Assembly (NCBI GenBank): GCA_029953675.1
Contig: JAMWBK010000005.1
Location: 1,922,001 to 1,986,000, forward strand
Reading direction: 5' to 3'
DNA: 64,000 nt
Source of the DNA: Rhodosorus marinus CCMP1338
Lineage: Eukaryota > Plantae > Rhodophyta
Part shown: positions 53,070-64,000 of the stretch, one piece after another
Position numbering within the stretch: position 1 is the first letter of the stretch
Layout of the letters: the number at the start of each line of letters is the position of its first letter
Program-made: the position numbers and the translations under genes
The notes under the pieces: generated by a model
Told to the model about the DNA's origin: nothing
What the model saw: only the letters and a program-made list of their open reading frames with translations
Database searches by the model: none

Positions 53070-56000
53070 CCTCTGTTCCCCTCCCCCCCCTCCGCTCACC
53101 CGAAGGAACCCCTCAAAATCAACGAACCAGCCCTTCCCAAAAACCCTACCCACACTCCACCCGTAGTGTTCACGAAGGCCTTGCCCCCCCCCCTCAACGG
53201 CCAAACCAAGCCAACTTTCCCTCAAGAAAAACCCTCCCCTCGCAAACGAAAACCAAACAACTTCAGCGACTTTTATATTCGAGTCCGTCGACAGCATTAA
53301 CCCTTTCAGCTCCTCGGATGGCCCTCTTATTTAGACCAGATTATTCATCTCCCTCCCACGCGGCGCTTGCAACCAAAAAGCTCGAAACCCTCTGTAGCAT
53401 CACCTCCGCTCATTCTCCCTCGAAACCTGAAAAAAAACGCTTCGCCAAGTCATACCGAAACGTCACCGAGTAATAATCAAAAAATAATAACAATGTCCAG
53501 AAAATCCTAAATTTATTAAATGTAGAAATACGAGTTTTATTTGAAGAGGAAGAAATGGAACTCAATGACTTCCCTGATTATGAATTGAAGAAGGGGGGGG
53601 GTTAGATCTCCTTGTATACGACAAAAAGTTTACTTAATATTATGTTTTCGTTTTTAGCTTGCAGTTTACCACCCGTAGAGTATAGGATACTGCATTGTCC
53701 TTTCAATAGGGACATTGCACGCTCTACTCAATTGAAAATTACTACCCTCACAGTATCTGAATTTTATATATATTATGGGTCTGTTAGAACTGATCCTGTA
53801 TGTTCAATTTCTCCCTCCCCAGTTGAAGCGCCGGGATTTTGGATGACCGAAATGTAAAAGGGGGTCTGTTGAAATTGGAAACAACAACTAACTTGGTTTC
53901 TAATGCTCTAGAGGCGGGATTCTTAAACCATTGAGATAGCAATGGATTTTCGAACATGAGGTCCGATCCAACAGGTTGAGGGTGTGGGCAAAACGTCATT
54001 TTTAGTCTTGTAATCAGATTTTTTGAGCGAAGCAACATAATTGGCTATTTTCGCATTTATCGGTCTCTGGAGAGAAGTACATTGGACAAGCGAAAAACAT
54101 TCGAAACTCGCACTATCCTCATTGGCTTATTTCATCCTATCATCTTCCGAGAACTCTTGTGGAGGAGACGAATTCGCCAGAATCAGTCAATTTTGATCCT
54201 ATACCTGACCATATGCGCGACGTTTCGGACGTCACCTCTACTGGCGCCCAATCATGTATCTGTGTCAACACTTCAACCAATTGGATGCGAAGACAGATCT
54301 GGTAGTTGGGGATGATTTCTTGGAGTTTTTCGTACCGGTCCTATAGAGTGTTTATCAATAATATATTATAATTCAATTCGCAGACTTGGCCGAGGTTAGG
54401 TTGCATTCGGCCACTACGAAACGAAGTTCCATGGTTTCCCACTCACCACTGGCAGATTGGGTTCCTTCACGGATACTGCACTCATGCACTCTCGCGGAGT
54501 TCATTGTGAGCTCGACGGGCGTTGTGGGGGGGGGGGTTGGCCACCAACCTTGAGAGGGTGACTGGGACTACCGTCTCATACCAGCAGCAGCATGGAGAAA
54601 CCTTGCTCCGAGTCAAGGTGAGGGGTACGCAGGGACCTGGTGCATTGGATCTAGTACAGTGGTCATCTTTGGAATCCTTTCTCAAAGGAAATGCGATTAC
54701 CTGAGCCTACACCGAGAGAGGTACAGAATGTGGTGGACCGCAGCCTTCCTTGAATATACAAAAGAGACCCCTGTTTATCCTTTGAAACGTTCCTTGCTTG
54801 GATGGCCAAACCGCCAATTCGCAGTCGTGGCCTGTATGACTTTGACCCATACCCTCTACCTTTGATGTTTCCGATGTTCGGACGTACATCGATCCGTTTT
54901 GTGTACGCAGGAATACCTCCTTCTTGCTTGGTTTCTCCTCCTTACAGTCCTTCGTCAGTGACCAAGCCTTCTTGCAATTTAGCCGACTCTTCTGCCTTTT
55001 TACATCCTCCATAGTTGTGATCCATCCCTTCCTTACCACACAACAGTATTTTACACTACCCCAACTACGCTCAATGAACAGTGCGGGGTAGACCGGACCC
55101 CGAACTGTTCTGACATAGTCGTGATCCTGCTAGTCCCGCTTCCAAACAAGAACGAGGAGAAGAAGAAGACGAAGAAAAAAAAAAAAAACAGGGCGCGAAA
55201 AATAAAGTATTATCGATAACCCCCATATAAAACTTGTCCCAAAACCGATCCAATCACCCTACCCCTCCTCCAGCTTTGTGTGCTAGAGAAAATTTATCAC
55301 AATAAGAAAAAACGGGGGCAAGGTGGGAGGAAAAGGCGTAGGGGGGTGGGGGAGTTGGAGGGCTGAGACCTCTATCTCTGCTTTTTTTAAATGAAAATTA
55401 TAAAAATGTTTTTCTGTAAAATTTACACATGTGAAATCTGTGTAAGCGAAAATGATACAAAAAAAAGTACGGCAAGTTTCATTTTTCTCAAGTTTTTTGA
55501 GTTTTCTCTAGTGAACTGAATTTTTAACAACTGTTTAGATTGTGTTGATTAATTTGCTTTTCATTTTTTCATTTTTCAAGGAGGCTGTTTTTTAGGTATG
55601 TTTCCGACGAAAGGGGACTCTCTGGTCTGGTCTGCTTGAAGTAGAGAGCGAGAGAGAGATTCCGTGGAAGGTTAGTAGGTTTTGGGGTAATGGGAGTAGG
55701 AGGGGGGGAAGGTAAGCTTGGAGAAGGAGAGGGCGGTGGGGTTGGATGAGGTGGGATGGGGGGTAGGGCTGTAGAGTGGTAGGATGGTAGGGTGGGAGGG
55801 GGCGGGGGGAGGGGGGGAAATGGGGAGAAGAGAATATTTAGAAAAGCTTATGGAATGTTCGCGGAGGGATCTATAAATGCTGGTAGGCTGATTGTCTGAG
55901 GCTTTCGAGTTGGTTTTCTTTTTTTTTCTTGTTTTGGTTGTAGTGGTTTGCGCTTTTGCTAGATCCTTGGCGTTTTCTAAGTGTGAGAGGTTGTTGGAGT

Positions 56001-56300: not shown

Positions 56301-57639
56301 ATGTCTGCACCGGTAGTATCTGATCAGGCCAATTGGCGTGATGAGTTGACTCCTGAAGCGAGGAAGGAAGCAAAAAACTTTCTGGTTTCCAAACTTCAGA
56401 GGAATCTTCCACGGGTACGCTGTGAACCGCTACCAAGTTATGATCTGGTTGAGTCGTGCCGCACCGGACAAAAAAACAAGACCGCCTAAATGAACCTGTC
56501 GGTCTAGATCAACTCAACAATTATTGTCTTTGGTCTACAGGACAAGCTGCTGGCTTATAGCCAAAGACACGAAGGGAACTGCTACGATAAGGCAACATCT
56601 ATTAGCAATTACATCCTGCTGGTCTGTGAGCCCGTGGACATTTTTGAGTATCAGCTTCAGCAGAAGCAGGCTGCTAAAGCTGCGCATGCAGCAAAACAAG
56701 CAGCAGCTGGTGAACAGGCCGCGTCGTCAATGGGTCAGCCCCATTCCAGCCTAAAACCCGGGGTACAAATGTCGGGTCGACCGAAAGCTCAACAAGCGCA
56801 AGTGCAAGCACGCAATGATCTCAACGGCATGCAAAACGTCGACCATGAGCAACGGGGATCCGTTAAGATGGAGCCCACAGCAGCAGTTCAAAACTCCCAG
56901 TACCCGCCGGATTCCGCTAGCTTTTATCAGGACGCCCAGGCACCAAAAATGACTTCACAGGTGAATCCGAACGTGATGCGACAGAGCGGAGTTTCTCCAC
57001 AGCAACAACAACCCCGGATGCAACCGAGGCAGATGGTACAACAGCAGCAGCAGCCGCCGCAGGCATCTGCCCAAGCGCAGCAGCCACCACAGCAGCAGCA
57101 ACCGCTTTCGGTACGTTTGCTCCGTAAGAAATTTCGGGCTGTCATTGGCACGGCGTGAGCTTTAGTCAATAGTTCCCCTGGTTTCGGGAACCGAGCCTGA
57201 AACGGCCCGTTCATGGTCTGTCTTGCGATTGCAAGTTGTTTTTGCTTGTTCTAAGCCGCTCTCGCGTTTCCTTTCTTCGCCCTTCGCGCCCCTTCAGGCT
57301 GACGGGAGGTCGCGGAACATTGCCGATCGGTATGAGGAGTTCAGGAGGGTCTACCAACAAAACTTCCATGTCTATGTGAGATACTGGCTCGGAGCTGACG
57401 CCCAGAATGAGGTTTCAAGTGAGGACCCGCAGGCTGCGAAACAAAGGAAGGAAACGCGTGACAAGTTGAGAATGTTCGACATGTACCTGAATACCGAGTA
57501 TGCTAAGCTTCCCAGGGGTTTGCAGAAGCCGCGAAATCTCGAGAACTTTATGTCGTTTGTTCAGCGAAAGGTGCTCGACCTGAAGCAGAGGAAACAGGCT
57601 TCCGCTCGAAATCGAGCTGCCGCTCCTGCAAACCAATAG
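56301..57639 (+). CDS. KIX-domain, Q-rich protein (MED15a N-terminus-like), 3 exons
   Basis: NWRDELTPEARKEAKNFLVSKLQRNLPR|DKLLAYSQRHEGNCYDKATSISNYI resembles the plant MED15 KIX domain, followed by a poly-Q region and a short helical C-terminal domain. Confidence 0.72.
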
Positions 57640-58091: not shown

Positions 58092-61000
58092 TTACAGCCT
58101 AGATCTATCCGTTGTCTCGGAGATCGATTTCGCAGTAAAAGCAGTTAGCGTCTCATCTCCATGACCAGCTTCGCTCTTGAACCACAGGCTGCGCTCAATG
58201 ATTAGCCGGGTTCGGACGAAGTCATACATATAGTACGCGATAATCGTTGATGGCACAACCTTTAAGGCATTTGGCACGACGCCTCGGTAGAACCCGAGCA
58301 ATCCCTGGGTTTGGTAAATCTCCCGGACAACATGTGCCATTCGAGGCCCCTTATCACCTTGCTGGCCTATACCGTCTACATGAAACAAAGGGCAGTTTGT
58401 AAGCGCGGAACCGCGCCTCGATTCTGGAACAGCTAATGACAATAACCAACCTAGAAAGCCGTGAACTTGCATTCTTCGTCGACAGGTGTCTAGGGGATAG
58501 GCGAGCGTCTGAGCGGTTAGGCTACCTACGCTCCCGCAAATCACCGCACTCGTCGGCGTCGGCAGTCCGGACCCGTCCTGCAACTTTGGAAAGAATTGTC
58601 TAAGCTGATCATAAGTAGCGTAGCTGATCCCTACGTATGGGAACACACCCAGCAGAGATGGGGTGAGTCCTCTGTAAACGCTGAGCAATCCAGTCTGCAA
58701 TGACAAAAGACGCGACGGCTTAGATTTTAGCAAATGCAGTCTCCACTGACCAAGCAGTTCGTTCAACTGCCGGGCCGTTCCGTACCTGTCGTATTGAAGA
58801 GCGTAAGCCGTGGAGTATTCCGTTGTACGGGCAATGTGATGCTGATTGAACTGATAGCCTCCCTCGGATAAACTCGAGCGGGTAAAGGGCAATCCCCGCG
58901 CATAATCCAGATACCCCGGCAATGGCAATTTTAGTCGACCCCGAGCTGGGCTTGAACTCCTTTGACTGCACGCTTCTGAGCATATGAAGCAAAAAAGAGT
59001 GTGACCGTTTGAGATGGTTTTAGACGCAAGAGGCCAGCAAACCCTGCTAGAAAGCTTGAAACGGCCGAGAATTCGTACTGCTTCCTCAGCTCATCGTTGT
59101 ACCCCAGTTTTTCCCGTATCAAGAAAACAGCAGAGAGCTGGATTATAGCGGTTGGAACGATGCGAATCACATTCGCGGCGTTCCCTCTAAAAAGACCCAT
59201 TAAGCTCGTCTCCCGCTGAACCATTGTTTTCATGCCCTGCGGAAAGAGTGCACAAAACTTGTGAGACAGACGATGGTTCCAAACGAACAGATCTCAGCAA
59301 GCAAACGAGCACCGCTCTGCGTGCGAACCTTCCAAAGATTAGTAAACTTCTTGTGCCCAGTGAGAGAATCTGTCTGCATCAATATCTTCAATCTCTCAAG
59401 GGGTGCTACAAAGGTTCGGGCGAGCGCACCCGATATTCCAACTGCAAGCAAATGAAGCAGGTCCAAATGCTGCTTTATCGTATTCTTAGGCTGCTAGACA
59501 TGTTTGGAGGCCAGGTGCATAGCACAGATATCAAGCGCAAGTCAGCAATGGCAGCTTCTGTGGTGCGGAGAAATTTCCGCTCTTTCCATAGGATAGGCAA
59601 CTCACCTCTCCTTCGGTTTTGTACAAGTACCCGTTAACAACATCGACATAGTCATGACTTTCGTCCTCATCATGCGCGACTGCAGGTTCCAAGTGGTACA
59701 ACATGTGCTCCGCGAGGAAATGGACATCCTGTTATGCAAAAGGCCTTTCATCTCAGCTCGCAAGCAAATGAGAGAGCAAGCGAAAACAGACCCGTACTCC
59801 TCCACCAAGGCCTTCCGGCTGTTAGGTGTCTCGCTCGCTCGCCAAATGACGGTGACGGCCAAGAGTCAGCGCAAGGCCATGAGGAGAGTATCTCAGGAGG
59901 TCCTAAGTGAGTTTCAAGCGCGGACGTAAACGCACCCGTCTGAACTGACCGGGCAGAATCGACCCCAGGGGCAGCTTGCAGTACTCTTTGTAAGATATTG
60001 CATGTGAACCATCCCTGCCGAACAGGTTGGAGAGAAACTGAAAGCTTGAAAGCATTTTTCCTGCTTCCTGCACCCGCGAAGAAGTCGCATAGTCTTGAGC
60101 AAACTTTTCTTCTTCTTGGTTCAGACGTGAATCAGCTTCGTTACCTCATCTATGTCCTTATATTCATTGAGGAGGGACATGAGCTCCTCAGCATCAATGA
60201 AACCACTGTTGTTTCTGTCGGCTAAACGAAAACCAAACTCAGCCTCCGCATTGGGCTGGTTTAGAACAATGTCGAACCGGACAAACTCCCAAAAGTCGAT
60301 AAGCACTTTGCCGTTGTCGCTTTCGTCACTGAATTCGGAAATGCAGACACCAAGATTTGCCTTAAGCACGTATACAGTGAATCGGAGAAGTAGACCCCAC
60401 GAGAAACAGAACAATGACTCACGCTTTTCTATTGCTGGTAACCAGCGAAATCAGAAGCCTAGAAAGCCTCTCTCGATCCTAGAAACACAATATGGAAAAA
60501 GTTTTAGACTCAGATTCGAAAGGTCGTGAAAGTGAAAATGAAAATTGTGTCACCCACCTCCTCTGGAAATGTGTCTACGTTTGCAAACTTGAGAAAATCC
60601 TCTGGTGTGGCGTAAAGCTTCCCGTCCCGTTTCACTGATGCATTTTTCTGGAAGACAGCCTGCAGGTACCTGGCGCCACCTCCAAGGTGAAGTCTGTGAA
60701 AGCCCTCTGCATTGATGGCCCAGCATTCAACATCGGTTCTGGCTCGAATCTGTTCGAGTTATCAAAGAGTGACCGAGAAAGGATCATTACAGTCAATCAG
60801 GCACGAAATTCTTGCAACCACAACAAGCGCGTGTCTACGTGCTAGGAATCTACTCACAGTGGCTGAGCGCCGAGAATTGTACATGAGCCCCAACTCCCCA
60901 AACGACTCTCCTGGAAAGATAGTCTTGGCCAAACTACCGCTGCCTTCACCCTGGCGATCATCACTGGAGCCTGCCAAGAAATCAGGGCATAAGCGATCAA

Positions 61001-63230
61001 GATACCGATGCCCAGAGGGAACGCGAGAGAATGGCAAACCAGACGCCGGGTTCCAATAACGAACCTTTAGACTTAGGGTGTGAAATATGCCTCTCACACT
61101 CGCCCTTAGACAGGATGTAAAAATTGTCATGCGCATCTCCTTGGTGAAAGATCTCCTCGCCAGCGCGAAACTTCAGCTTGAAAAACAAGTTCAGCTCGCT
61201 AGGACCGATCCGGTCGAGACTGCGGAACAGGAAATGCTCTTCTAGCGTTTTCCGGAGCTGTCTCTGCTCTGCAGAAGACAAAATCTGGCTTGCCTCTCGT
61301 TCATCTCTGTAGTTTTCAAATGTGGGTCTGTCCACAGTCCACAACACGGACCTCTCCGTGGCCCGAATCTATGCCGAACGAATTCTAAGCATTAGCTCAT
61401 CATCCTTGACTCCTGTCGGGCTCAATAGAAGCGTATATGCTATGCCTTACCGTGGAGGTGCGAGGGGTAGGATACATAAAAGCGGTCATTCCAAACGAAG
61501 TATGTGGACCCAGCGATGAGACAAGGATTGGTGGGCCGTTGTCCTTGGTGATGAATCTATCTACAGCACCAGATTCTAAAATGTAAAGTTGATTTCCGTA
61601 CTCCCCCTATCCTAAGAAAAACGTTCAGACGATGCTCAGCAGTTTCTCAAGCTGCCATTATCGGGCAAAGTGTGTAAGAATGGCGGGACCCAACCTGTTC
61701 AAATATAACATCTCCTGGGTCGACCACGACCGATCGGAAGCTCTTGAGAAACTCCAGGCGCTTGTATAGATCTGGGATCTCATATGCGATGGGACTCCTC
61801 TTCAATACTTTGCGGAGAACACTGAGGCTCTCTTTCGACGGGGTTTGGCCGGTTTCTACGTTTTTCCTAGAACCGTCAGAATTATCTGAGACAATTGTTC
61901 CATCCCTGCGCACGAGAACATTCAGTCGATTCCACAAGAAGATGCGAAGTCCGTCATATACACGCTCGCACGCCTCTGCCGTGCGAGCGACTTGTGGCGT
62001 TGGGCAATTAGCTACCGTCGAAGGTAGAGCTCTCGGCTCAAACGATTTCGATCCAACAGCTTCAATGATGCTGCGGGGTCCGAGCAAAAGTCTCTCGGCG
62101 TATAGCTATCCGCTTTGGGGTAAGGTTCCAGAAGCTTCAGACGCTGGTACGACGCAGCAACGAGCTCAGAACAAAATACCCGAGCGAGATCATCCTCTCT
62201 GCGCATTCGCTTGGTTGAAACAGGTCTTTCGCCTAGATGGGGAGGGGGGGGGGGAAGGGATTGTGCGTCAGCTGCTGAAGACGAAACCTAGGTATCTCGG
62301 TCTGCTGCTCTTATGAACGGTGAACAAGACATACTCTCAATCACCTCGTTCAATCGAGCCGATAGGACTTCGACGTTTCTGCTAACCCGAGTCCTCTCCG
62401 CCAGCAGTACTCGTCTCTGGTACGTTGTAAGAACCGCATTATCCAGTTCCCGCTGAATGTCTGTCAGCTGCTCCTTCTTCTCTATTAACAGTGCGTGGAG
62501 CCTCTCGCGCTCCTGTTTTGTTAGGGGGTCGAACACAGCTTGAGCAGCTGTTTTCCATTGGCAGAGGGTGCTTCTTCGTCAGAGATCACAGCATATAAAG
62601 AAATGCGTGCTTTGGAATTCGGTATAGGCGTCAACGAGTTGATCACCTTGAAGTAAGCCGGTCCCTGTCTCGTATGGTCTGCCCGTCATCTGTTGTGCAA
62701 AGTTCCAGAGCTGTCTGCGGAACTCGTCCGTGCGCATGGCCGAAAGCCTTCGTACTGCGATGTCATGTGATTTACTGGGCGTCGCGTGTTTAGAGAGTCA
62801 ATGAGCAGCTTTGAAAATATTTGCATACGCTGCTTAGCTGCTTACCTCTTGGAAACACGGTCACTGAGCTTGCGTAGCTTCACACCGCCAAGATCAGCTT
62901 CCAGGAAGAACAGTTTCTTTGAATCTGGGTCTCTCACAACTATTCCTACATGGTCCCATTTACTATTCGAAAAGAACTTGGCCACGATGCAGATGGCAGC
63001 ACCGTAAGCAGTCATCGACGTGCATCTGGGAAGGGAGGAAAATATGGCCAGCGATTCGGTCGGCCCTCAACACTTCTTAGCCACTTCAGAGTTGAAAGCA
63101 ATTGAGCTAGAAAGACCTCGTCACGTTACCTTCTGTTAAAAAGCACGATATCACCGGAGTCCACACTCCTGGGGAGTTGAACCTCAGCTGGCTTCTCTTG
63201 CTTGCTTTCTTCCTCCGTTCCTTTCTCCAT
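58092..63230 (-). CDS. Multidomain mitochondrial-carrier fusion: permuted NlpC/P60 amidase + 2 cNMP-binding domains + EF-hands + SLC25 carrier (20 exons, about 1135 aa)
   Basis: Amidase motifs DSGDIVLF, WDHVGIV, LEADLGGV, GRPYE, VFCSELVAASY, YTPRDF. cNMP motifs PGDVIFEQGEYGNQLYILESG, AGEEIFHQGDAHDNFYILSKG and FGELGLMYNSRRSAT. EF loop DRNNSGFIDAEE. Carrier signatures PLERLKILMQ, PLEFIRGRLSVQ and PLDTCRRRMQ. Nineteen GT-AG introns of 67-117 nt all preserve frame. Confidence 0.83.
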
Positions 63231-64000
63231 GATGAACAACTTTTCAACTTCGTTTCTCACAAACAGCACATCCTCATAATCGAGGCCGTTGTCGTCTCGC
63301 CGTTCGCACTAATCAGGCTCATACCGTCCTGAAAATTACGAGCTCACGATTTGCACCCCTCCTCGCTCAGCACTTATTGTCGAGCAACGACCATCCGTCC
63401 AGATTCTAATACGAATCCCCCGGTCATCCGCATCAAGCTACGCACGAGGTGAGCCAGTAAAAAAGGCCGCCCCCCACGCATTCGTTCGTTCCCGTCGCTT
63501 TTACCAAGCAACCAGGACCCTCAAAATATCTGCACTTGCATGAAAAACTTTCCAGAGGCAGCTCAAAAGTCTTCCTTCAAAAAGTATCCTGACTTCCGCA
63601 ATCCTCAAGACCCATCCACACCTGCAGATTCCTGTACCACTGCTGAACTGCGTAAGCCCAGATCCAAATGAAGACAGATCTCTAGTAAATGTACTGACCA
63701 GGTTTCGTAATCCTCAGAGCTTCCAAAGCACAGAAAATGACCAAAATTCTCTTCCCCGGCTTCCAAGCAGAAACTCTCGAGTCTCCAGCCAACTATTACC
63801 ATCACTGTCTTCGTTCTCATGAGGAAGTTGTTTACACTCTCCAAATAGTCTGCTGAAGAAGACGGTCGAGCTGAGTTCAGAACCCGAAAACGAGTTCTTT
63901 CTTTCGGCTGTACTTAATTGAACACAAAGTAAATTAATTTAAAATTCTACGTTCATTCCAGATTGGACGTGTTTCTCTCTCAGCTGGCCTAGAAAGGCTC

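What the first reader, a model, noticed from the sequence alone, without database searches (positions are those of the whole stretch)
58092..63230. Candidate new system: one polypeptide linking a papain-like Cys amidase, two cyclic-nucleotide sensors, Ca2+ EF-hands and an SLC25 nucleotide carrier
Seen in sequence: minus-strand exons 63230-63130, 63025-62846, 62774-62647, 62547-62335, 62232-62016, 61905-61695, 61606-61451, 61368-61065, 60970-60858, 60749-60558, 60478-60423, 60328-60145, 60067-59936, 59818-59798, 59728-59606, 59493-59329, 59236-59043, 58975-58786, 58694-58451 and 58375-58092 join at GT-AG sites with matching phases into 3408 nt (1135 aa plus stop). Domain order: (1) circularly permuted NlpC/P60 (YiiX/YebB-like) domain with His (WDHVGIV) before Cys (FCSELV) and a coiled-coil insert of about 70 aa; (2) two PKA-R/PKG-like cNMP-binding domains; (3) EF-hands; (4) a full three-repeat mitochondrial carrier. 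Established: known regulated SLC25 carriers (aralar/citrin, SCaMC/APC) carry only N-terminal EF-hand domains facing the intermembrane space. Permuted NlpC/P60 enzymes include amidases, lipases and acyltransferases (LRAT/PLAAT, YiiX). I know of no described carrier carrying cNMP sensors plus an enzyme domain. Inference: a transporter that integrates cAMP/cGMP and Ca2+ signals, with a tethered hydrolase or acyltransferase acting on membrane lipids or proteins, or on itself.
Basis: partly seen in the sequence, partly recalled or inferred. Interest (0 to 1): 0.92.

Follow-up and report, generated by a model that had tools for sequence, protein, structure and literature searches.

The report
Enzyme-tethered, cNMP/Ca2+-sensing mitochondrial carrier
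A red-alga gene really does encode one long protein joining a lipid-type cysteine hydrolase, two cyclic-nucleotide sensors and a calcium sensor to a mitochondrial nucleotide-type transporter; the same uncharacterised design is conserved in many algae, oomycetes and euglenozoans.

Summary
The 20-exon minus-strand model gives one 1135-aa ORF with 19 GT-AG introns. A sister-strain transcript confirms junctions 1-12, and the Cyanidioschyzon merolae orthologue is one uninterrupted ORF. The window is Rhodosorus marinus, locus NDN08_001573. Only the 21-nt micro-exon 14 (probably spurious) and the exon 17 donor are in doubt.

All four module types pass Pfam thresholds:
- A YiiX/C92 permuted NlpC/P60 domain with invariant His59/Glu76/Cys228/Tyr236 and a family-specific ~90-aa helical hairpin.
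- A PKA-R-like tandem of cNMP-binding domains. The second is canonical; the first has lost the ribose-binding Glu in red algae.
- An EF-hand module of the aralar/citrin/MICU type, not the SCaMC type, with one canonical loop.
- A three-repeat SLC25 carrier nearest to ADNT1/APC/CoA carriers, but on a separate branch from them.

The architecture also occurs in red algae generally, streptophyte algae, oomycetes, euglenozoans and an ochrophyte, under automatic names only. I found no paper describing it.

Best reading: an inner-membrane nucleotide/CoA-class carrier. Its intermembrane-space arm senses Ca2+ and cNMP and carries an active lipid-directed Cys hydrolase or acyltransferase. This is a new variant of regulated SLC25 carriers. 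Function is inferred, not shown.

The parts
58092..63230 (-). Coding region of the gene (Rhodosorus marinus NDN08_001573). It has 19-20 exons and gives 1116-1135 aa depending on two small model choices.
63231..63885 (-). 5' UTR, colinear with the sister-strain transcript contig L001 and without an intron.
   Evidence: L001 14-778 aligns to 63885-63130. In-frame stop upstream of the ATG.
62663..63158 (-). YiiX/C92 permuted NlpC/P60 domain, N-terminal beta-core half (aa 25-131). It contains catalytic His59 (62950-62952) and Glu76 (62899-62901). Introns 1-2 lie inside the span.
   Evidence: Pfam PF05708 39.6 bits. Foldseek top hit YiiX 2if6, probability 1.0. Invariant H59 and E76.
62180..62539 (-). 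Family-specific helical hairpin insert (aa ~140-225; predicted helices 144-173 and 178-208) between the beta-core and the Cys helix.
   Evidence: YiiX aligns straight across this gap. AF2 pLDDT 91-98 for the helices. An insert of 89-126 aa is present in all family members.
61899..62179 (-). Catalytic Cys helix and C-terminal part of the amidase domain (aa 226-282). Cys228 is at 62171-62173 and Tyr236 at 62147-62149.
   Evidence: FCSELVAA.YQ is invariant or nearly invariant. Cys lies at the N-terminus of helix 228-238.
61255..61781 (-). Cyclic-nucleotide-binding domain A (aa ~322-440). Its phosphate-binding cassette FGMTAFMYPTPRTSTIRA (61360-61495, interrupted by intron 7) keeps the Arg, but the Glu is replaced by Met.
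   Evidence: Pfam cNMP_binding. PKA RII-beta alignment 334-561, E 3e-28. PBC comparison.
60678..61254 (-). Cyclic-nucleotide-binding domain B (aa ~441-565), with a canonical cassette FGELGLMYNSRRSATIRA (60741-60902, interrupted by intron 9).
59714..60677 (-). EF-hand regulatory module of the aralar/citrin/MICU type (aa ~566-741). The one canonical Ca2+ loop is DRNNSGFIDAEE (60184-60219). The module ends with a conserved helix, DVHFLAEHMLYHL (59678-59728).
   Evidence: Profile vs PDB: DdMICU 9k6m 8e-15, citrin 4p5w 4e-13, aralar 4p5x 5e-12, SCaMC 4zcu only 1.8e-4. AF2 pLDDT 82. Foldseek top hits citrin and aralar.
59798..59818 (-). Doubtful and probably intronic.
   Evidence: Absent from all homologues and from the deposited model. 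The acceptor AG is not conserved in L001, although 20/21 nt are conserved.
58200..59436 (-). SLC25 carrier domain with three ~100-aa repeats (aa ~797-1100). Matrix-gate motifs are PLERLK, PLEFIR and PLDTCR. Cytoplasmic-gate motifs are YDQLR (H4) and YDFVR (H6).
   Evidence: Mito_carr x3, 187.5 bits. Yeast AAC2/3 5e-23. Motif table. Nearest named relatives ADNT1, SLC25A23/24/25/41 and CoAc2/GDC.

Best explanation
The locus is one gene of the red alga Rhodosorus marinus. It encodes a ~1120-aa member of an old, widely distributed and so far uncharacterised family of SLC25 mitochondrial carriers with a ~790-residue N-terminal arm.

Shown here:
- It is a single polypeptide.
- The arm consists of (i) a YiiX-like circularly permuted NlpC/P60 cysteine enzyme with its four catalytic residues intact and a family-specific helical hairpin, (ii) a PKA-regulatory-subunit-like tandem of cNMP-binding domains, and (iii) an EF-hand module homologous to the intermembrane-space Ca2+ sensors of aralar/citrin and MICU.
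- The C-terminal part is a complete three-repeat carrier whose nearest named relatives are adenine-nucleotide and CoA carriers.

Inferred:
- The carrier sits in the mitochondrial inner membrane with the arm in the intermembrane space, as for every SLC25 N-terminus and for aralar and MICU.
- Ca2+ binds at the canonical EF loop, and cAMP or cGMP binds at least at CNB-B. These events change the arm's conformation and gate transport of an adenine-nucleotide- or CoA-like substrate, by analogy with aralar/citrin and APC.
- The same switch probably controls the tethered enzyme, as CNB tandems do in PKA and PKG.
- The enzyme probably acts on a fatty-acyl amide, ester or thioester, either a lipid or a lipidated protein, at the outer face of the inner membrane. 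This follows from the hydrophobic, fatty-acid-binding S1 pocket described for YiiX-type enzymes.
For: One gene:
- The splice model is clean.
- Junctions 1-12 match a spliced transcript from a sister strain.
- The deposited model is identical apart from two small indels.
- The C. merolae orthologue is one uninterrupted ORF.
- Complete-ORF transcripts exist in Eucheuma and Gracilaria.

Family conservation:
- About 55 full-length homologues at 40-50% identity.
- The same architecture at 33-39% identity in Chlorokybus, Mesostigma, Lagenidium, Phytophthora, Achlya, Aphanomyces, Euglena and Papus.
- Amidase fused directly to the carrier in Chrysoparadoxa.

Amidase:
- Pfam C92 scores above its cut-off.
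- His59/Glu76/Cys228/Tyr236 are invariant in 20 family members and kept in oomycetes, streptophyte algae and euglenozoans. These match the Cys/His/Tyr plus polar-residue set defined for permuted NlpC/P60 enzymes, whose S1 pocket is hydrophobic and holds a fatty acid in YiiX (PMC3142127).
- AF2 model pLDDT 79, with Foldseek top hit YiiX at probability 1.0.

cNMP sensors:
- PKA RII-beta E 3e-28 over both domains.
- The CNB-B cassette FGEL...R(A/S/G)AT is conserved family-wide.

Ca2+ sensor:
- Profile and fold matches to citrin/aralar and DdMICU.
- The canonical loop DRNNSGFIDAEE is conserved in red algae.

Carrier:
- Three repeats with the gate motifs.
- Nearest named relatives are ADNT1, APC and CoA carriers at 32-38% identity.
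- All amidase-bearing carriers fall on one side of a 99/99-supported branch.
Against: - Nothing here measures localisation, topology, ligand binding, transport or catalysis.
- CNB-A in red algae has Leu or Met in place of the ribose-binding Glu. It may bind weakly, bind something else, or be structural.
- Only one EF loop is canonical. The position equivalent to aralar's Ca2+-binding EF-hand 2 is degenerate and carries a variable acidic insert. Oomycete members have lost the canonical loop, so Ca2+ control is not universal in the family.
- The carrier lies outside the clade of named nucleotide/CoA carriers, and the H2 cytoplasmic-gate motif is degenerate. The substrate is therefore unknown.
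- SLC25 members also occur in plastid envelopes, peroxisomes and the ER.
- Two unnamed family members have lost the catalytic His and Cys, so catalysis is dispensable in some lineages.
- The 3' junctions (13-19) lack direct spliced-transcript support in Rhodosorus.
Confidence: 0.6

Rival explanations
1. The enzyme is the main output. On this reading the protein is chiefly a cNMP- and Ca2+-switched lipid or protein deacylase/acyltransferase, built like PKG or Epac with a CNB tandem autoinhibiting a neighbouring catalytic domain. The carrier domain mainly anchors it in the membrane or supplies or removes its substrate.
For: - The CNB tandem sits directly next to the amidase, as in intramolecularly regulated CNB enzymes.
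- The catalytic residues are under strong conservation across very distant lineages.
- Permuted NlpC/P60 enzymes are typically fused to membrane-targeting modules (PMC3142127).
- Amidase-CNB proteins without a carrier appear in the databases (P0095, P0109, P0200).
Against: - The carrier keeps its full gate motifs and contact-point features in all lineages, which a mere anchor would not need.
- Amidase-carrier fusions without any CNB exist (P0152, P0120).
- Pseudo-amidase members retain the carrier (P0103, P0112).
- Several of the carrier-less entries come from short contigs or may be truncated models.
Confidence: 0.2
2. Coupled enzyme-transporter. The Cys enzyme would take an acyl group from an acyl-CoA or an N-acyl compound at the membrane surface, and the carrier would move the released CoA- or nucleotide-type product. 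Together they would form a signal-gated acyl/CoA handling unit.
For: - The amidase is fused to this one carrier lineage in every architecture, even when the sensors are missing, which is a Rosetta-stone type link.
- The nearest named carriers include the CoA carriers CoAc2 and the Graves-disease carrier.
- YiiX binds a fatty acid, and LRAT-type relatives work through an acyl-Cys intermediate (PMC3142127).
Against: - This is purely inferential; no substrate is known for any C92 enzyme or for this carrier.
- The carrier is equally close to ADNT1 and APC.
- Pseudo-amidase members exist.
Confidence: 0.1
3. Gene-model artefact: two or more neighbouring genes (amidase-CNB-EF and a carrier) wrongly joined.
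For: - The only Rhodosorus transcript contig found stops being spliced after exon 13, and its ORF ends before the carrier.
- The scan for 3' transcripts found nothing.
Against: - That same contig runs on colinearly into exon 16 (to 59463), so the RNA continues towards the carrier.
- C. merolae has a single uninterrupted ORF.
- Complete-ORF transcripts exist in two florideophytes.
- More than 60 independent gene models in at least five eukaryotic groups show the same order.
- All frames match across 19 introns.
Confidence: 0.02
4. The sensor domains are relics. The CNB and EF modules would no longer bind ligands in Rhodosorus and would serve only as a structural spacer or oligomerisation scaffold.
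For: - CNB-A lacks the PBC Glu.
- Three of about four EF-like motifs are degenerate.
- Oomycete members have lost the canonical EF loop.
Against: - The CNB-B cassette and the one EF loop are canonical and conserved across red algae.
- The PBC Arg of CNB-A is conserved in most family members, and in all red algae examined.
- Epac-type CNBs bind cAMP without that Glu (my own knowledge).
Confidence: 0.08

Closest known systems
Aralar/citrin (AGC1/2, SLC25A12/13), the Ca2+-regulated aspartate/glutamate carriers
   Same: Both have an N-terminal EF-hand regulatory domain followed by an SLC25 carrier. The EF module here is specifically homologous to theirs by sequence profile (4p5w 4e-13, 4p5x 5e-12) and by fold (top Foldseek hits). 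This includes the opening 'L..iF.kyASve..Ge.yMT..DF' segment.
   Different: - The carrier domain is not AGC-like; its nearest named relatives are ADNT1, APC and CoA carriers.
- Only the first ~4 EF-hand-like motifs are covered, so there is no counterpart of the EF4-8 dimerisation unit.
- The canonical loop is at the position aligned to aralar's EF3, not at its Ca2+-binding EF2 (plus my knowledge of the aralar structure).
- Aralar has no CNB domains and no enzyme domain.
APC/SCaMC (SLC25A23/24/25/41) ATP-Mg/Pi carriers, and ADNT1
   Same: Automatic annotations assign family members to this KO or name. The carrier domain is 32-38% identical to ADNT1/APC-type proteins, with similar helix 2, 4 and 6 motifs. 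The concept is also shared: an EF-hand sensor gating a nucleotide-type carrier.
   Different: - The EF module is only marginally similar to the SCaMC domain (4zcu 1.8e-4 against 1e-13 to 1e-15 for aralar and MICU).
- In the carrier tree, all amidase-bearing proteins are separated from named APC/ADNT1/CoA carriers by a 99/99 branch.
- This protein has the extra amidase and CNB modules.
YiiX/YaeF (Peptidase C92) permuted NlpC/P60 enzymes; the LRAT/PLAAT family more distantly
   Same: - Permuted order, with His before Cys.
- A Cys/His/Tyr plus polar-residue catalytic set.
- Pfam hit above the gathering cut-off.
- YiiX is the best structural match.
- Association with membranes is typical of the class (PMC3142127).
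   Different: - It carries a ~90-aa helical hairpin inserted just before the Cys helix. This is absent from YiiX and from the ~200-aa bacterial relatives.
- It is covalently tethered to sensors and a carrier.
- No C92 enzyme has a known physiological substrate, so 'amidase' is only a family label.
PKA regulatory subunits and PKG (tandem CNB-A/CNB-B switches)
   Same: The two consecutive CNB domains align over their whole length to PKA RII-beta and RI-alpha and to apicomplexan PKG (E down to 3e-28). CNB-B has a PKA-like cassette.
   Different: - No dimerisation/docking domain and no kinase-inhibitor site, going by my reading of the region N-terminal to CNB-A in the family alignment. No kinase is attached, and no Pfam domain other than C92 was called upstream of the CNBs.
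- CNB-A lacks the PBC Glu in red algae.
- The regulated partner would be a hydrolase and/or a transporter.
MICU1-type mitochondrial Ca2+ uptake regulators
   Same: The best sequence-profile hit of the EF module is Dictyostelium MICU (9k6m, 8e-15). Human MICU1 also scores (~2e-4). Both are intermembrane-space Ca2+ sensors.
   Different: MICU proteins are soluble or peripheral regulators of the MCU channel and are not fused to a carrier. Only part of the MICU fold is matched.

Membership tests
SLC25 mitochondrial carrier family | Three tandem ~100-residue repeats (Pfam Mito_carr x3) | tested here: met
   PF00153, 3 stretches, 187.5 bits against a cut-off of 22.3. Aligns end to end with yeast AAC2/3 and bovine AAC1.
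SLC25 mitochondrial carrier family | P-x-[DE]-x-x-[KR] matrix-gate motif on helices 1, 3 and 5; [FY]-[DE]-x-x-[KR] cytoplasmic-gate motif on helices 2, 4 and 6 | tested here: met
   PLERLK, PLEFIR and PLDTCR are all present and conserved family-wide. YDQLR (H4) and YDFVR (H6) are present. The H2 motif is degenerate.
SLC25 mitochondrial carrier family | Inner-membrane localisation and solute exchange activity | not testable with these tools
   Needs tagging or fractionation, and proteoliposome assays.
APC/SCaMC (SLC25A23/24/25/41) | Carrier domain groups with APC carriers | tested here: not met
   In the carrier-domain tree, plant EF-hand APC proteins, ADNT1 and CoAc/GDC carriers lie across a 99/99-supported branch from every amidase-bearing carrier. 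Identity to them is only 32-38%.
APC/SCaMC (SLC25A23/24/25/41) | Calmodulin-like four-EF-hand N-terminal domain of the SCaMC type | tested here: not met
   SCaMC-1 domain 4zcu scores 1.8e-4 over a single EF loop. Citrin, aralar and MICU score 4e-13 to 8e-15 over most of the module.
Aralar/citrin (AGC) | N-terminal EF-hand regulatory domain of the aralar type | tested here: met
   Profile hits 4p5w and 4p5x. These are also the top Foldseek hits at probability 1.0. Only the first ~170 residues of the aralar domain are covered.
Aralar/citrin (AGC) | Aspartate/glutamate-type carrier domain | tested here: not met
   No AGC protein appears among the 120 best listed named relatives of the carrier domain; those are ADNT1, APC, CoAc2 and GDC. 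Caveat: the search's length window (0.55-1.75x of 309 aa) excludes full-length AGCs of ~680 aa, so this test is weak.
Peptidase C92 (YaeF/YiiX-like permuted NlpC/P60) | Circular permutation: catalytic His in the N-terminal beta-core, catalytic Cys at the start of a C-terminal helix | tested here: met
   WDH59VG precedes FC228SELV. Cys lies at the N-terminus of predicted helix 228-238. The alignment to YiiX 2if6 covers both halves.
Peptidase C92 (YaeF/YiiX-like permuted NlpC/P60) | [quoted passage not shown] | tested here: met
   H59, E76, C228 and Y236 are invariant in alignment A1. They are conserved in streptophyte, oomycete, euglenozoan and ochrophyte members.
Peptidase C92 (YaeF/YiiX-like permuted NlpC/P60) | Score above the Pfam gathering threshold, and fold match | tested here: met
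   39.6 bits against 27. Foldseek 2if6 E 4e-4, probability 1.00, rmsd 2.5 A over 105 columns. Profile-to-PDB sequence E is only 0.052.
Peptidase C92 (YaeF/YiiX-like permuted NlpC/P60) | Hydrophobic S1 pocket and lipid-directed hydrolase or transferase activity | not tested
   Model coordinates were not inspectable here. Activity needs biochemistry.
PKA-R/PKG-type tandem cNMP-binding module | Two consecutive CNB domains, each with a phosphate-binding cassette (Gly-Glu ... Arg-[AST]-A) | tested here: inconclusive
   CNB-B is canonical: FGELGLMYNSRRSAT. CNB-A keeps the Arg but has Met or Leu for Glu in red algae, while it is canonical in some other lineages. Binding was not measured.
PKA regulatory subunit proper | N-terminal dimerisation/docking domain and kinase inhibitor site | tested here: not met
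   The region N-terminal to CNB-A is the amidase domain, and no other Pfam domain was called there. I saw no inhibitor-site or docking-domain-like segment in the family alignment; this is a reading by eye, not a dedicated search.
EF-hand Ca2+ sensor | Canonical 12-residue loop with D-x-[DNS]-x-[DNS]-G ... E | tested here: met
   DRNNSGFIDAEE (aa 661-672). EF-hand_7, _1 and _6 hits. Conserved in red algae. The partner loops are degenerate, and the loop is disrupted in oomycetes.

The most novel reading that the evidence does not exclude
This would be the first mitochondrial carrier gated directly by a cyclic nucleotide, implying a cNMP readout in the mitochondrial intermembrane space of algae, oomycetes and euglenozoans. 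Its tethered Cys enzyme and carrier would work as one machine: the enzyme strips or transfers a fatty-acyl group from an acyl-CoA-like or N-acyl substrate at the membrane face, and the carrier moves the CoA- or nucleotide-type product. The result would be a signal-controlled route for acyl/CoA handling distinct from known shuttles.
Probability: 0.1. Interest if true: 0.9.

Novelty: new variant of a known kind. Interest (0 to 1): 0.7.

Why it matters
The characterised regulated SLC25 carriers I know of (aralar/citrin, APC/SCaMC) use only EF-hand domains. A carrier that also carries PKA-type cyclic-nucleotide sensors and a catalytically intact enzyme would add a second-messenger input and a covalent-chemistry output to mitochondrial transport.

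The family is conserved across very distant eukaryotes. These include tractable models (Cyanidioschyzon merolae, Euglena) and economically important oomycetes (Phytophthora, Aphanomyces). It appears absent from animals, fungi and land plants among the named hits. It therefore offers three things:
- A testable case of cNMP signalling at mitochondria.
- The first physiological context for the orphan YiiX/C92 enzyme family.
- A lineage-restricted protein that might be relevant to oomycete biology.

The repeated co-occurrence of this amidase subtype with one carrier lineage, with or without the sensors, is a strong hint that the two activities are functionally linked.

Tried and rejected
- Gene-fusion artefact: rejected. 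Evidence is the transcript blocks, the intronless C. merolae ORF and the many independent gene models.
- Membership in APC/ADNT1: not supported by the tree.
- Search for spliced 3' transcripts of Rhodosorus in JGI metagenome and metatranscriptome contigs: 81 pattern matches, none confirmed.
- Literature: nine full-text searches combined mitochondrial carrier or SLC25 with cyclic nucleotide, cNMP, EF-hand, fusion, red alga or Phytophthora, or used Pfam names. None found a description of the architecture. The Phytophthora zoospore membrane-proteome paper mentions the terms only separately.
- Amidase module alone against the protein database: only ~200-aa hairpin-less C92 proteins with no informative names. 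The link to the Plasmodium mitochondrial C92 candidate PF3D7_1121500 (PMC8550323) could not be tested.
- Rfam, tandem-repeat and ORF scans of the surroundings: no RNA family and no tandem array near the gene.
- Micro-exon 14: considered real on intron-size and conservation grounds, but set aside because no homologue has it and the acceptor is not conserved.

Full report

All 19 introns are GT...AG, and the product is one ORF of 1135 codons ending in TAA. Introns are 67-117 nt. An in-frame stop lies 26 codons upstream of the ATG, and 16 of the 19 introns would introduce stops if retained.

A database search identifies the locus. The deposited protein KAJ8905062.1 (hypothetical protein NDN08_001573, Rhodosorus marinus, 1116 aa) is identical to the model except for two indels. 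The window is therefore from this unicellular red alga.

Direct transcript evidence comes from a 3359-nt JGI contig (L001) from a sister strain, at about 94% nucleotide identity. Junctions 1-12 are thus confirmed.

Downstream, that contig is unspliced through introns 13-15 and ends 30 nt into exon 16. It shows the RNA continuing towards the carrier, but it does not confirm those splices. A scan of JGI contigs for 3' transcripts found nothing.

**2. Two details of the model are doubtful.**

- Micro-exon 14 (59818-59798, PEGLGGG) has no counterpart in any homologue, and the deposited model skips it. Its acceptor AG reads CAC in the sister strain. Yet the 21 nt are 20/21 conserved, against 75-78% for the flanking introns. 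I treat it as probably non-coding and leave it flagged as unexplained.
- The exon 17 donor is either 59043 (reader) or 59079 (deposited model). This is a 12-aa difference in the variable helix 2-helix 3 loop, and homology cannot decide between them.

Neither point touches a domain.

**3. One polypeptide, and not only here.**

The Cyanidioschyzon merolae orthologue (BAM83499.1, 1222 aa) is encoded by a single uninterrupted 3669-nt ORF on chromosome record AP006502.2. Complete-ORF transcriptome contigs from Eucheuma denticulatum and Gracilaria changii encode the same domain set.

The word-indexed search returned about 55 proteins of 1100-1320 aa at 39-50% identity with Peptidase_C92 + cNMP_binding + Mito_carr. 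An exhaustive HMMER pass over 1.84 billion representatives extended this at 33-39% identity. New members were Chlorokybus atmophyticus, Mesostigma viride, the oomycetes Lagenidium, Phytophthora fragariae/rubi/cinnamomi, Achlya and Aphanomyces, and the euglenozoans Euglena gracilis and Papus ankaliazontas.

Variants exist:
- Amidase fused directly to the carrier, with no sensors (Chrysoparadoxa australica P0152, and P0120).
- cNMP x2 + EF + carrier without the amidase (Chromosphaera perkinsii P0094, and P0096).
- A few amidase-CNB proteins without a carrier, some of which are probably truncated models.

The names given by sources are all automatic. Examples are 'hypothetical protein', 'similar to mitochondrial calcium-dependent solute carrier', 'ADNT1', 'SCaMC-1', 'Mitochondrial Carrier (MC) Family' and 'Cyclic nucleotide-binding domain-containing protein'.

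**4. The amidase module (aa ~25-282).**

Pfam Peptidase_C92 scores 39.6 bits against a cut-off of 27, but covers only the His half. A profile of 20 family N-termini aligns to E. coli YiiX (2if6) over 'W/YSH.G...EA' and then directly over 'FCSE.V...YQ'. This shows that the family has an insert just before the Cys helix. The insert is 89-126 residues in every member examined.

His59, Glu76, Cys228 and Tyr236 are invariant in the 20-sequence alignment. They are also retained in streptophyte, oomycete, euglenozoan and ochrophyte members. This is exactly the Cys/His/Tyr plus polar-residue set that Xu et al. define for permuted NlpC/P60 enzymes. Those authors also report a hydrophobic S1 pocket with a bound fatty acid in YiiX, and frequent fusion of such enzymes to membrane-targeting modules (PMC3142127).

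An AlphaFold2 model (mean pLDDT 79) shows three things: the beta-core, two long confident helices (144-173 and 178-208) forming a hairpin, and Cys228 at the N-terminus of a helix. Foldseek ranks YiiX first (probability 1.00, rmsd 2.5 A over 105 columns). The remaining weak hits are SMC/Rad50-type coiled coils.

Two unnamed members (P0103, P0112) have lost His and Cys. Searching with the module alone finds only ~200-aa hairpin-less C92 proteins beyond the family.

**5. The cNMP sensors (aa ~322-565).**

Both domains align to PKA RII-beta (E 3e-28), to RI-alpha and to apicomplexan PKG.

CNB-B has a canonical phosphate-binding cassette, FGELGLMYNSRRSATIRA. The family consensus is FGELSLMYNAPRAAT. 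Gly-Glu/Asp and Arg are conserved in almost all members.

CNB-A keeps the Arg but has Met or Leu in place of the Glu in all red algae examined. It is canonical or Asp/Glu-bearing in oomycetes, Chromosphaera and P0096.

So at least one competent site is expected. Nucleotide selectivity cannot be called from sequence.

**6. The Ca2+ sensor (aa ~566-753).**

A profile of this region hits three structures far more strongly than the SCaMC-1 domain 4zcu (1.8e-4). They are Dictyostelium MICU (9k6m, 8e-15), citrin (4p5w, 4e-13) and aralar (4p5x, 5e-12).

The AF2 model (pLDDT 82) has citrin and aralar as its top structural matches, followed by DdMICU.

One loop, DRNNSGFIDAEE, is canonical and is conserved in red algae. 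The position aligned with aralar's Ca2+-binding EF-hand is degenerate and holds a variable acidic insert. Oomycete members have disrupted the canonical loop.

A conserved helix follows the last EF-hand (LPP.F..DV..L..HM, invariant Pro and Asp). It is predicted with high confidence. By analogy with the amphipathic helix of APC carriers, it could be the element that communicates with the carrier. That is my inference only.

**7. The carrier (aa ~797-1100).**

Three Mito_carr repeats score 187.5 bits. The domain aligns end to end with the ADP/ATP carriers.

The matrix-gate motifs PLERLK, PLEFIR and PLDTCR are present and conserved across the family, as are the cytoplasmic-gate motifs on helices 4 and 6. 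The helix 2 motif is degenerate.

The nearest named proteins, at 32-38% identity, are ADNT1, SLC25A23/24/25/41-type carriers, CoAc2 and the Graves-disease carrier.

In a maximum-likelihood tree of 47 carrier domains, a 99/99-supported branch separates two groups. One side holds every amidase-bearing carrier: red algal, streptophyte, oomycete, euglenozoan and ochrophyte. The other holds all named ADNT1/APC/CoA carriers, together with the amidase-less CNB-EF-carriers.

The tree is unrooted and has several long branches. The safe reading is that the amidase-bearing carriers form a distinct lineage next to the adenine-nucleotide/CoA carriers, not members of a named subfamily. This is consistent with a single origin of the amidase-carrier fusion.

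**8. How it most likely works.**

Shown here: one polypeptide, intact catalytic residues, at least one canonical cNMP site and one canonical Ca2+ site, and a complete carrier.

From established knowledge: SLC25 N-termini face the intermembrane space, aralar and MICU sensors work there, and CNB tandems act as ligand-driven conformational switches on a neighbouring domain.

Inference: an inner-membrane carrier for an adenine-nucleotide- or CoA-like solute, whose intermembrane-space arm reads Ca2+ and cAMP or cGMP and gates transport. The same switch controls a tethered lipid-directed Cys hydrolase or acyltransferase at the membrane face.

The amidase stays with this carrier lineage even where the sensors are missing. 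That argues the two activities are functionally linked. Whether the link is regulation, substrate channelling or lipid remodelling around the carrier is open.

The rival explanations, in order of weight, are:
- The enzyme is the main output.
- A coupled acyl/CoA machine.
- Relic sensors.
- A non-mitochondrial location.
- A gene-model artefact, which is effectively refuted.

**9. Novelty.**

Nine full-text searches of about 8.4 million papers and preprints found no description of a carrier with cNMP sensors or a C92 enzyme. The library lacks most subscription journals, so a prior mention cannot be excluded.

The sequences themselves are public and auto-annotated, so this is not a new gene. It is an uncharacterised and widely conserved variant of the regulated-SLC25 theme.

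I rate it a new variant of a known kind, with interest 0.7. The architecture and its conservation would surprise a carrier specialist and are directly testable in C. merolae. All of the function remains inferred.

Noticed in passing
window 55650-55830 (+ strand): A G/purine-rich low-complexity stretch (GGGAGG-type runs; GC skew 0.62) in the intergenic region ~2.3 kb beyond the gene's stop. TRF calls no tandem array and there is no Rfam hit.
   Followed up: partly
window 56634-57639 (+ strand): ORFs encoding a glutamine-rich low-complexity product. This is probably a neighbouring gene converging on the carrier gene's 3' end.
   Followed up: no
L003 4001-4020 (C. merolae orthologue P0049); also P0047: The Cyanidiales orthologues begin MGNGQS / MGNAQS, which matches the Met-Gly-x-x-x-Ser N-myristoylation consensus (my own knowledge). 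Rhodosorus begins MEKGTE. This is curious in a protein carrying a YiiX-like domain proposed to cleave fatty-acyl amides (PMC3142127).
   Followed up: no
L001 2731-3359 = window 60069-59463: The sister-strain transcript contig is spliced at introns 1-12 but retains introns 13-15. Its ORF ends just after the EF module (P0002, 804 aa), giving a carrier-less amidase-CNB-EF product. Whether this is pre-mRNA or a regulated isoform is unknown.
   Followed up: partly
window 58376-58450 (intron 19): This 75-nt intron is in frame and free of stops. Retention would insert 25 residues into the matrix loop of carrier repeat 3.
   Followed up: no
Its acceptor AG is not conserved and no homologue encodes it.
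   Followed up: yes
P0103, P0112 (unnamed eukaryotic family members): These full-length family members have lost both the catalytic His and the catalytic Cys of the amidase while keeping the CNB and carrier parts. They look like pseudo-enzyme versions, and they group together in the carrier tree.
   Followed up: partly
P0094 (Chromosphaera perkinsii), P0096, P0102, P0106: This is a second, separate kind of cNMP-sensor carrier: cNMP x2 + EF-hands + carrier without the amidase. Its carrier domain groups with APC/ADNT1-type carriers rather than with the amidase-bearing family.
   Followed up: partly
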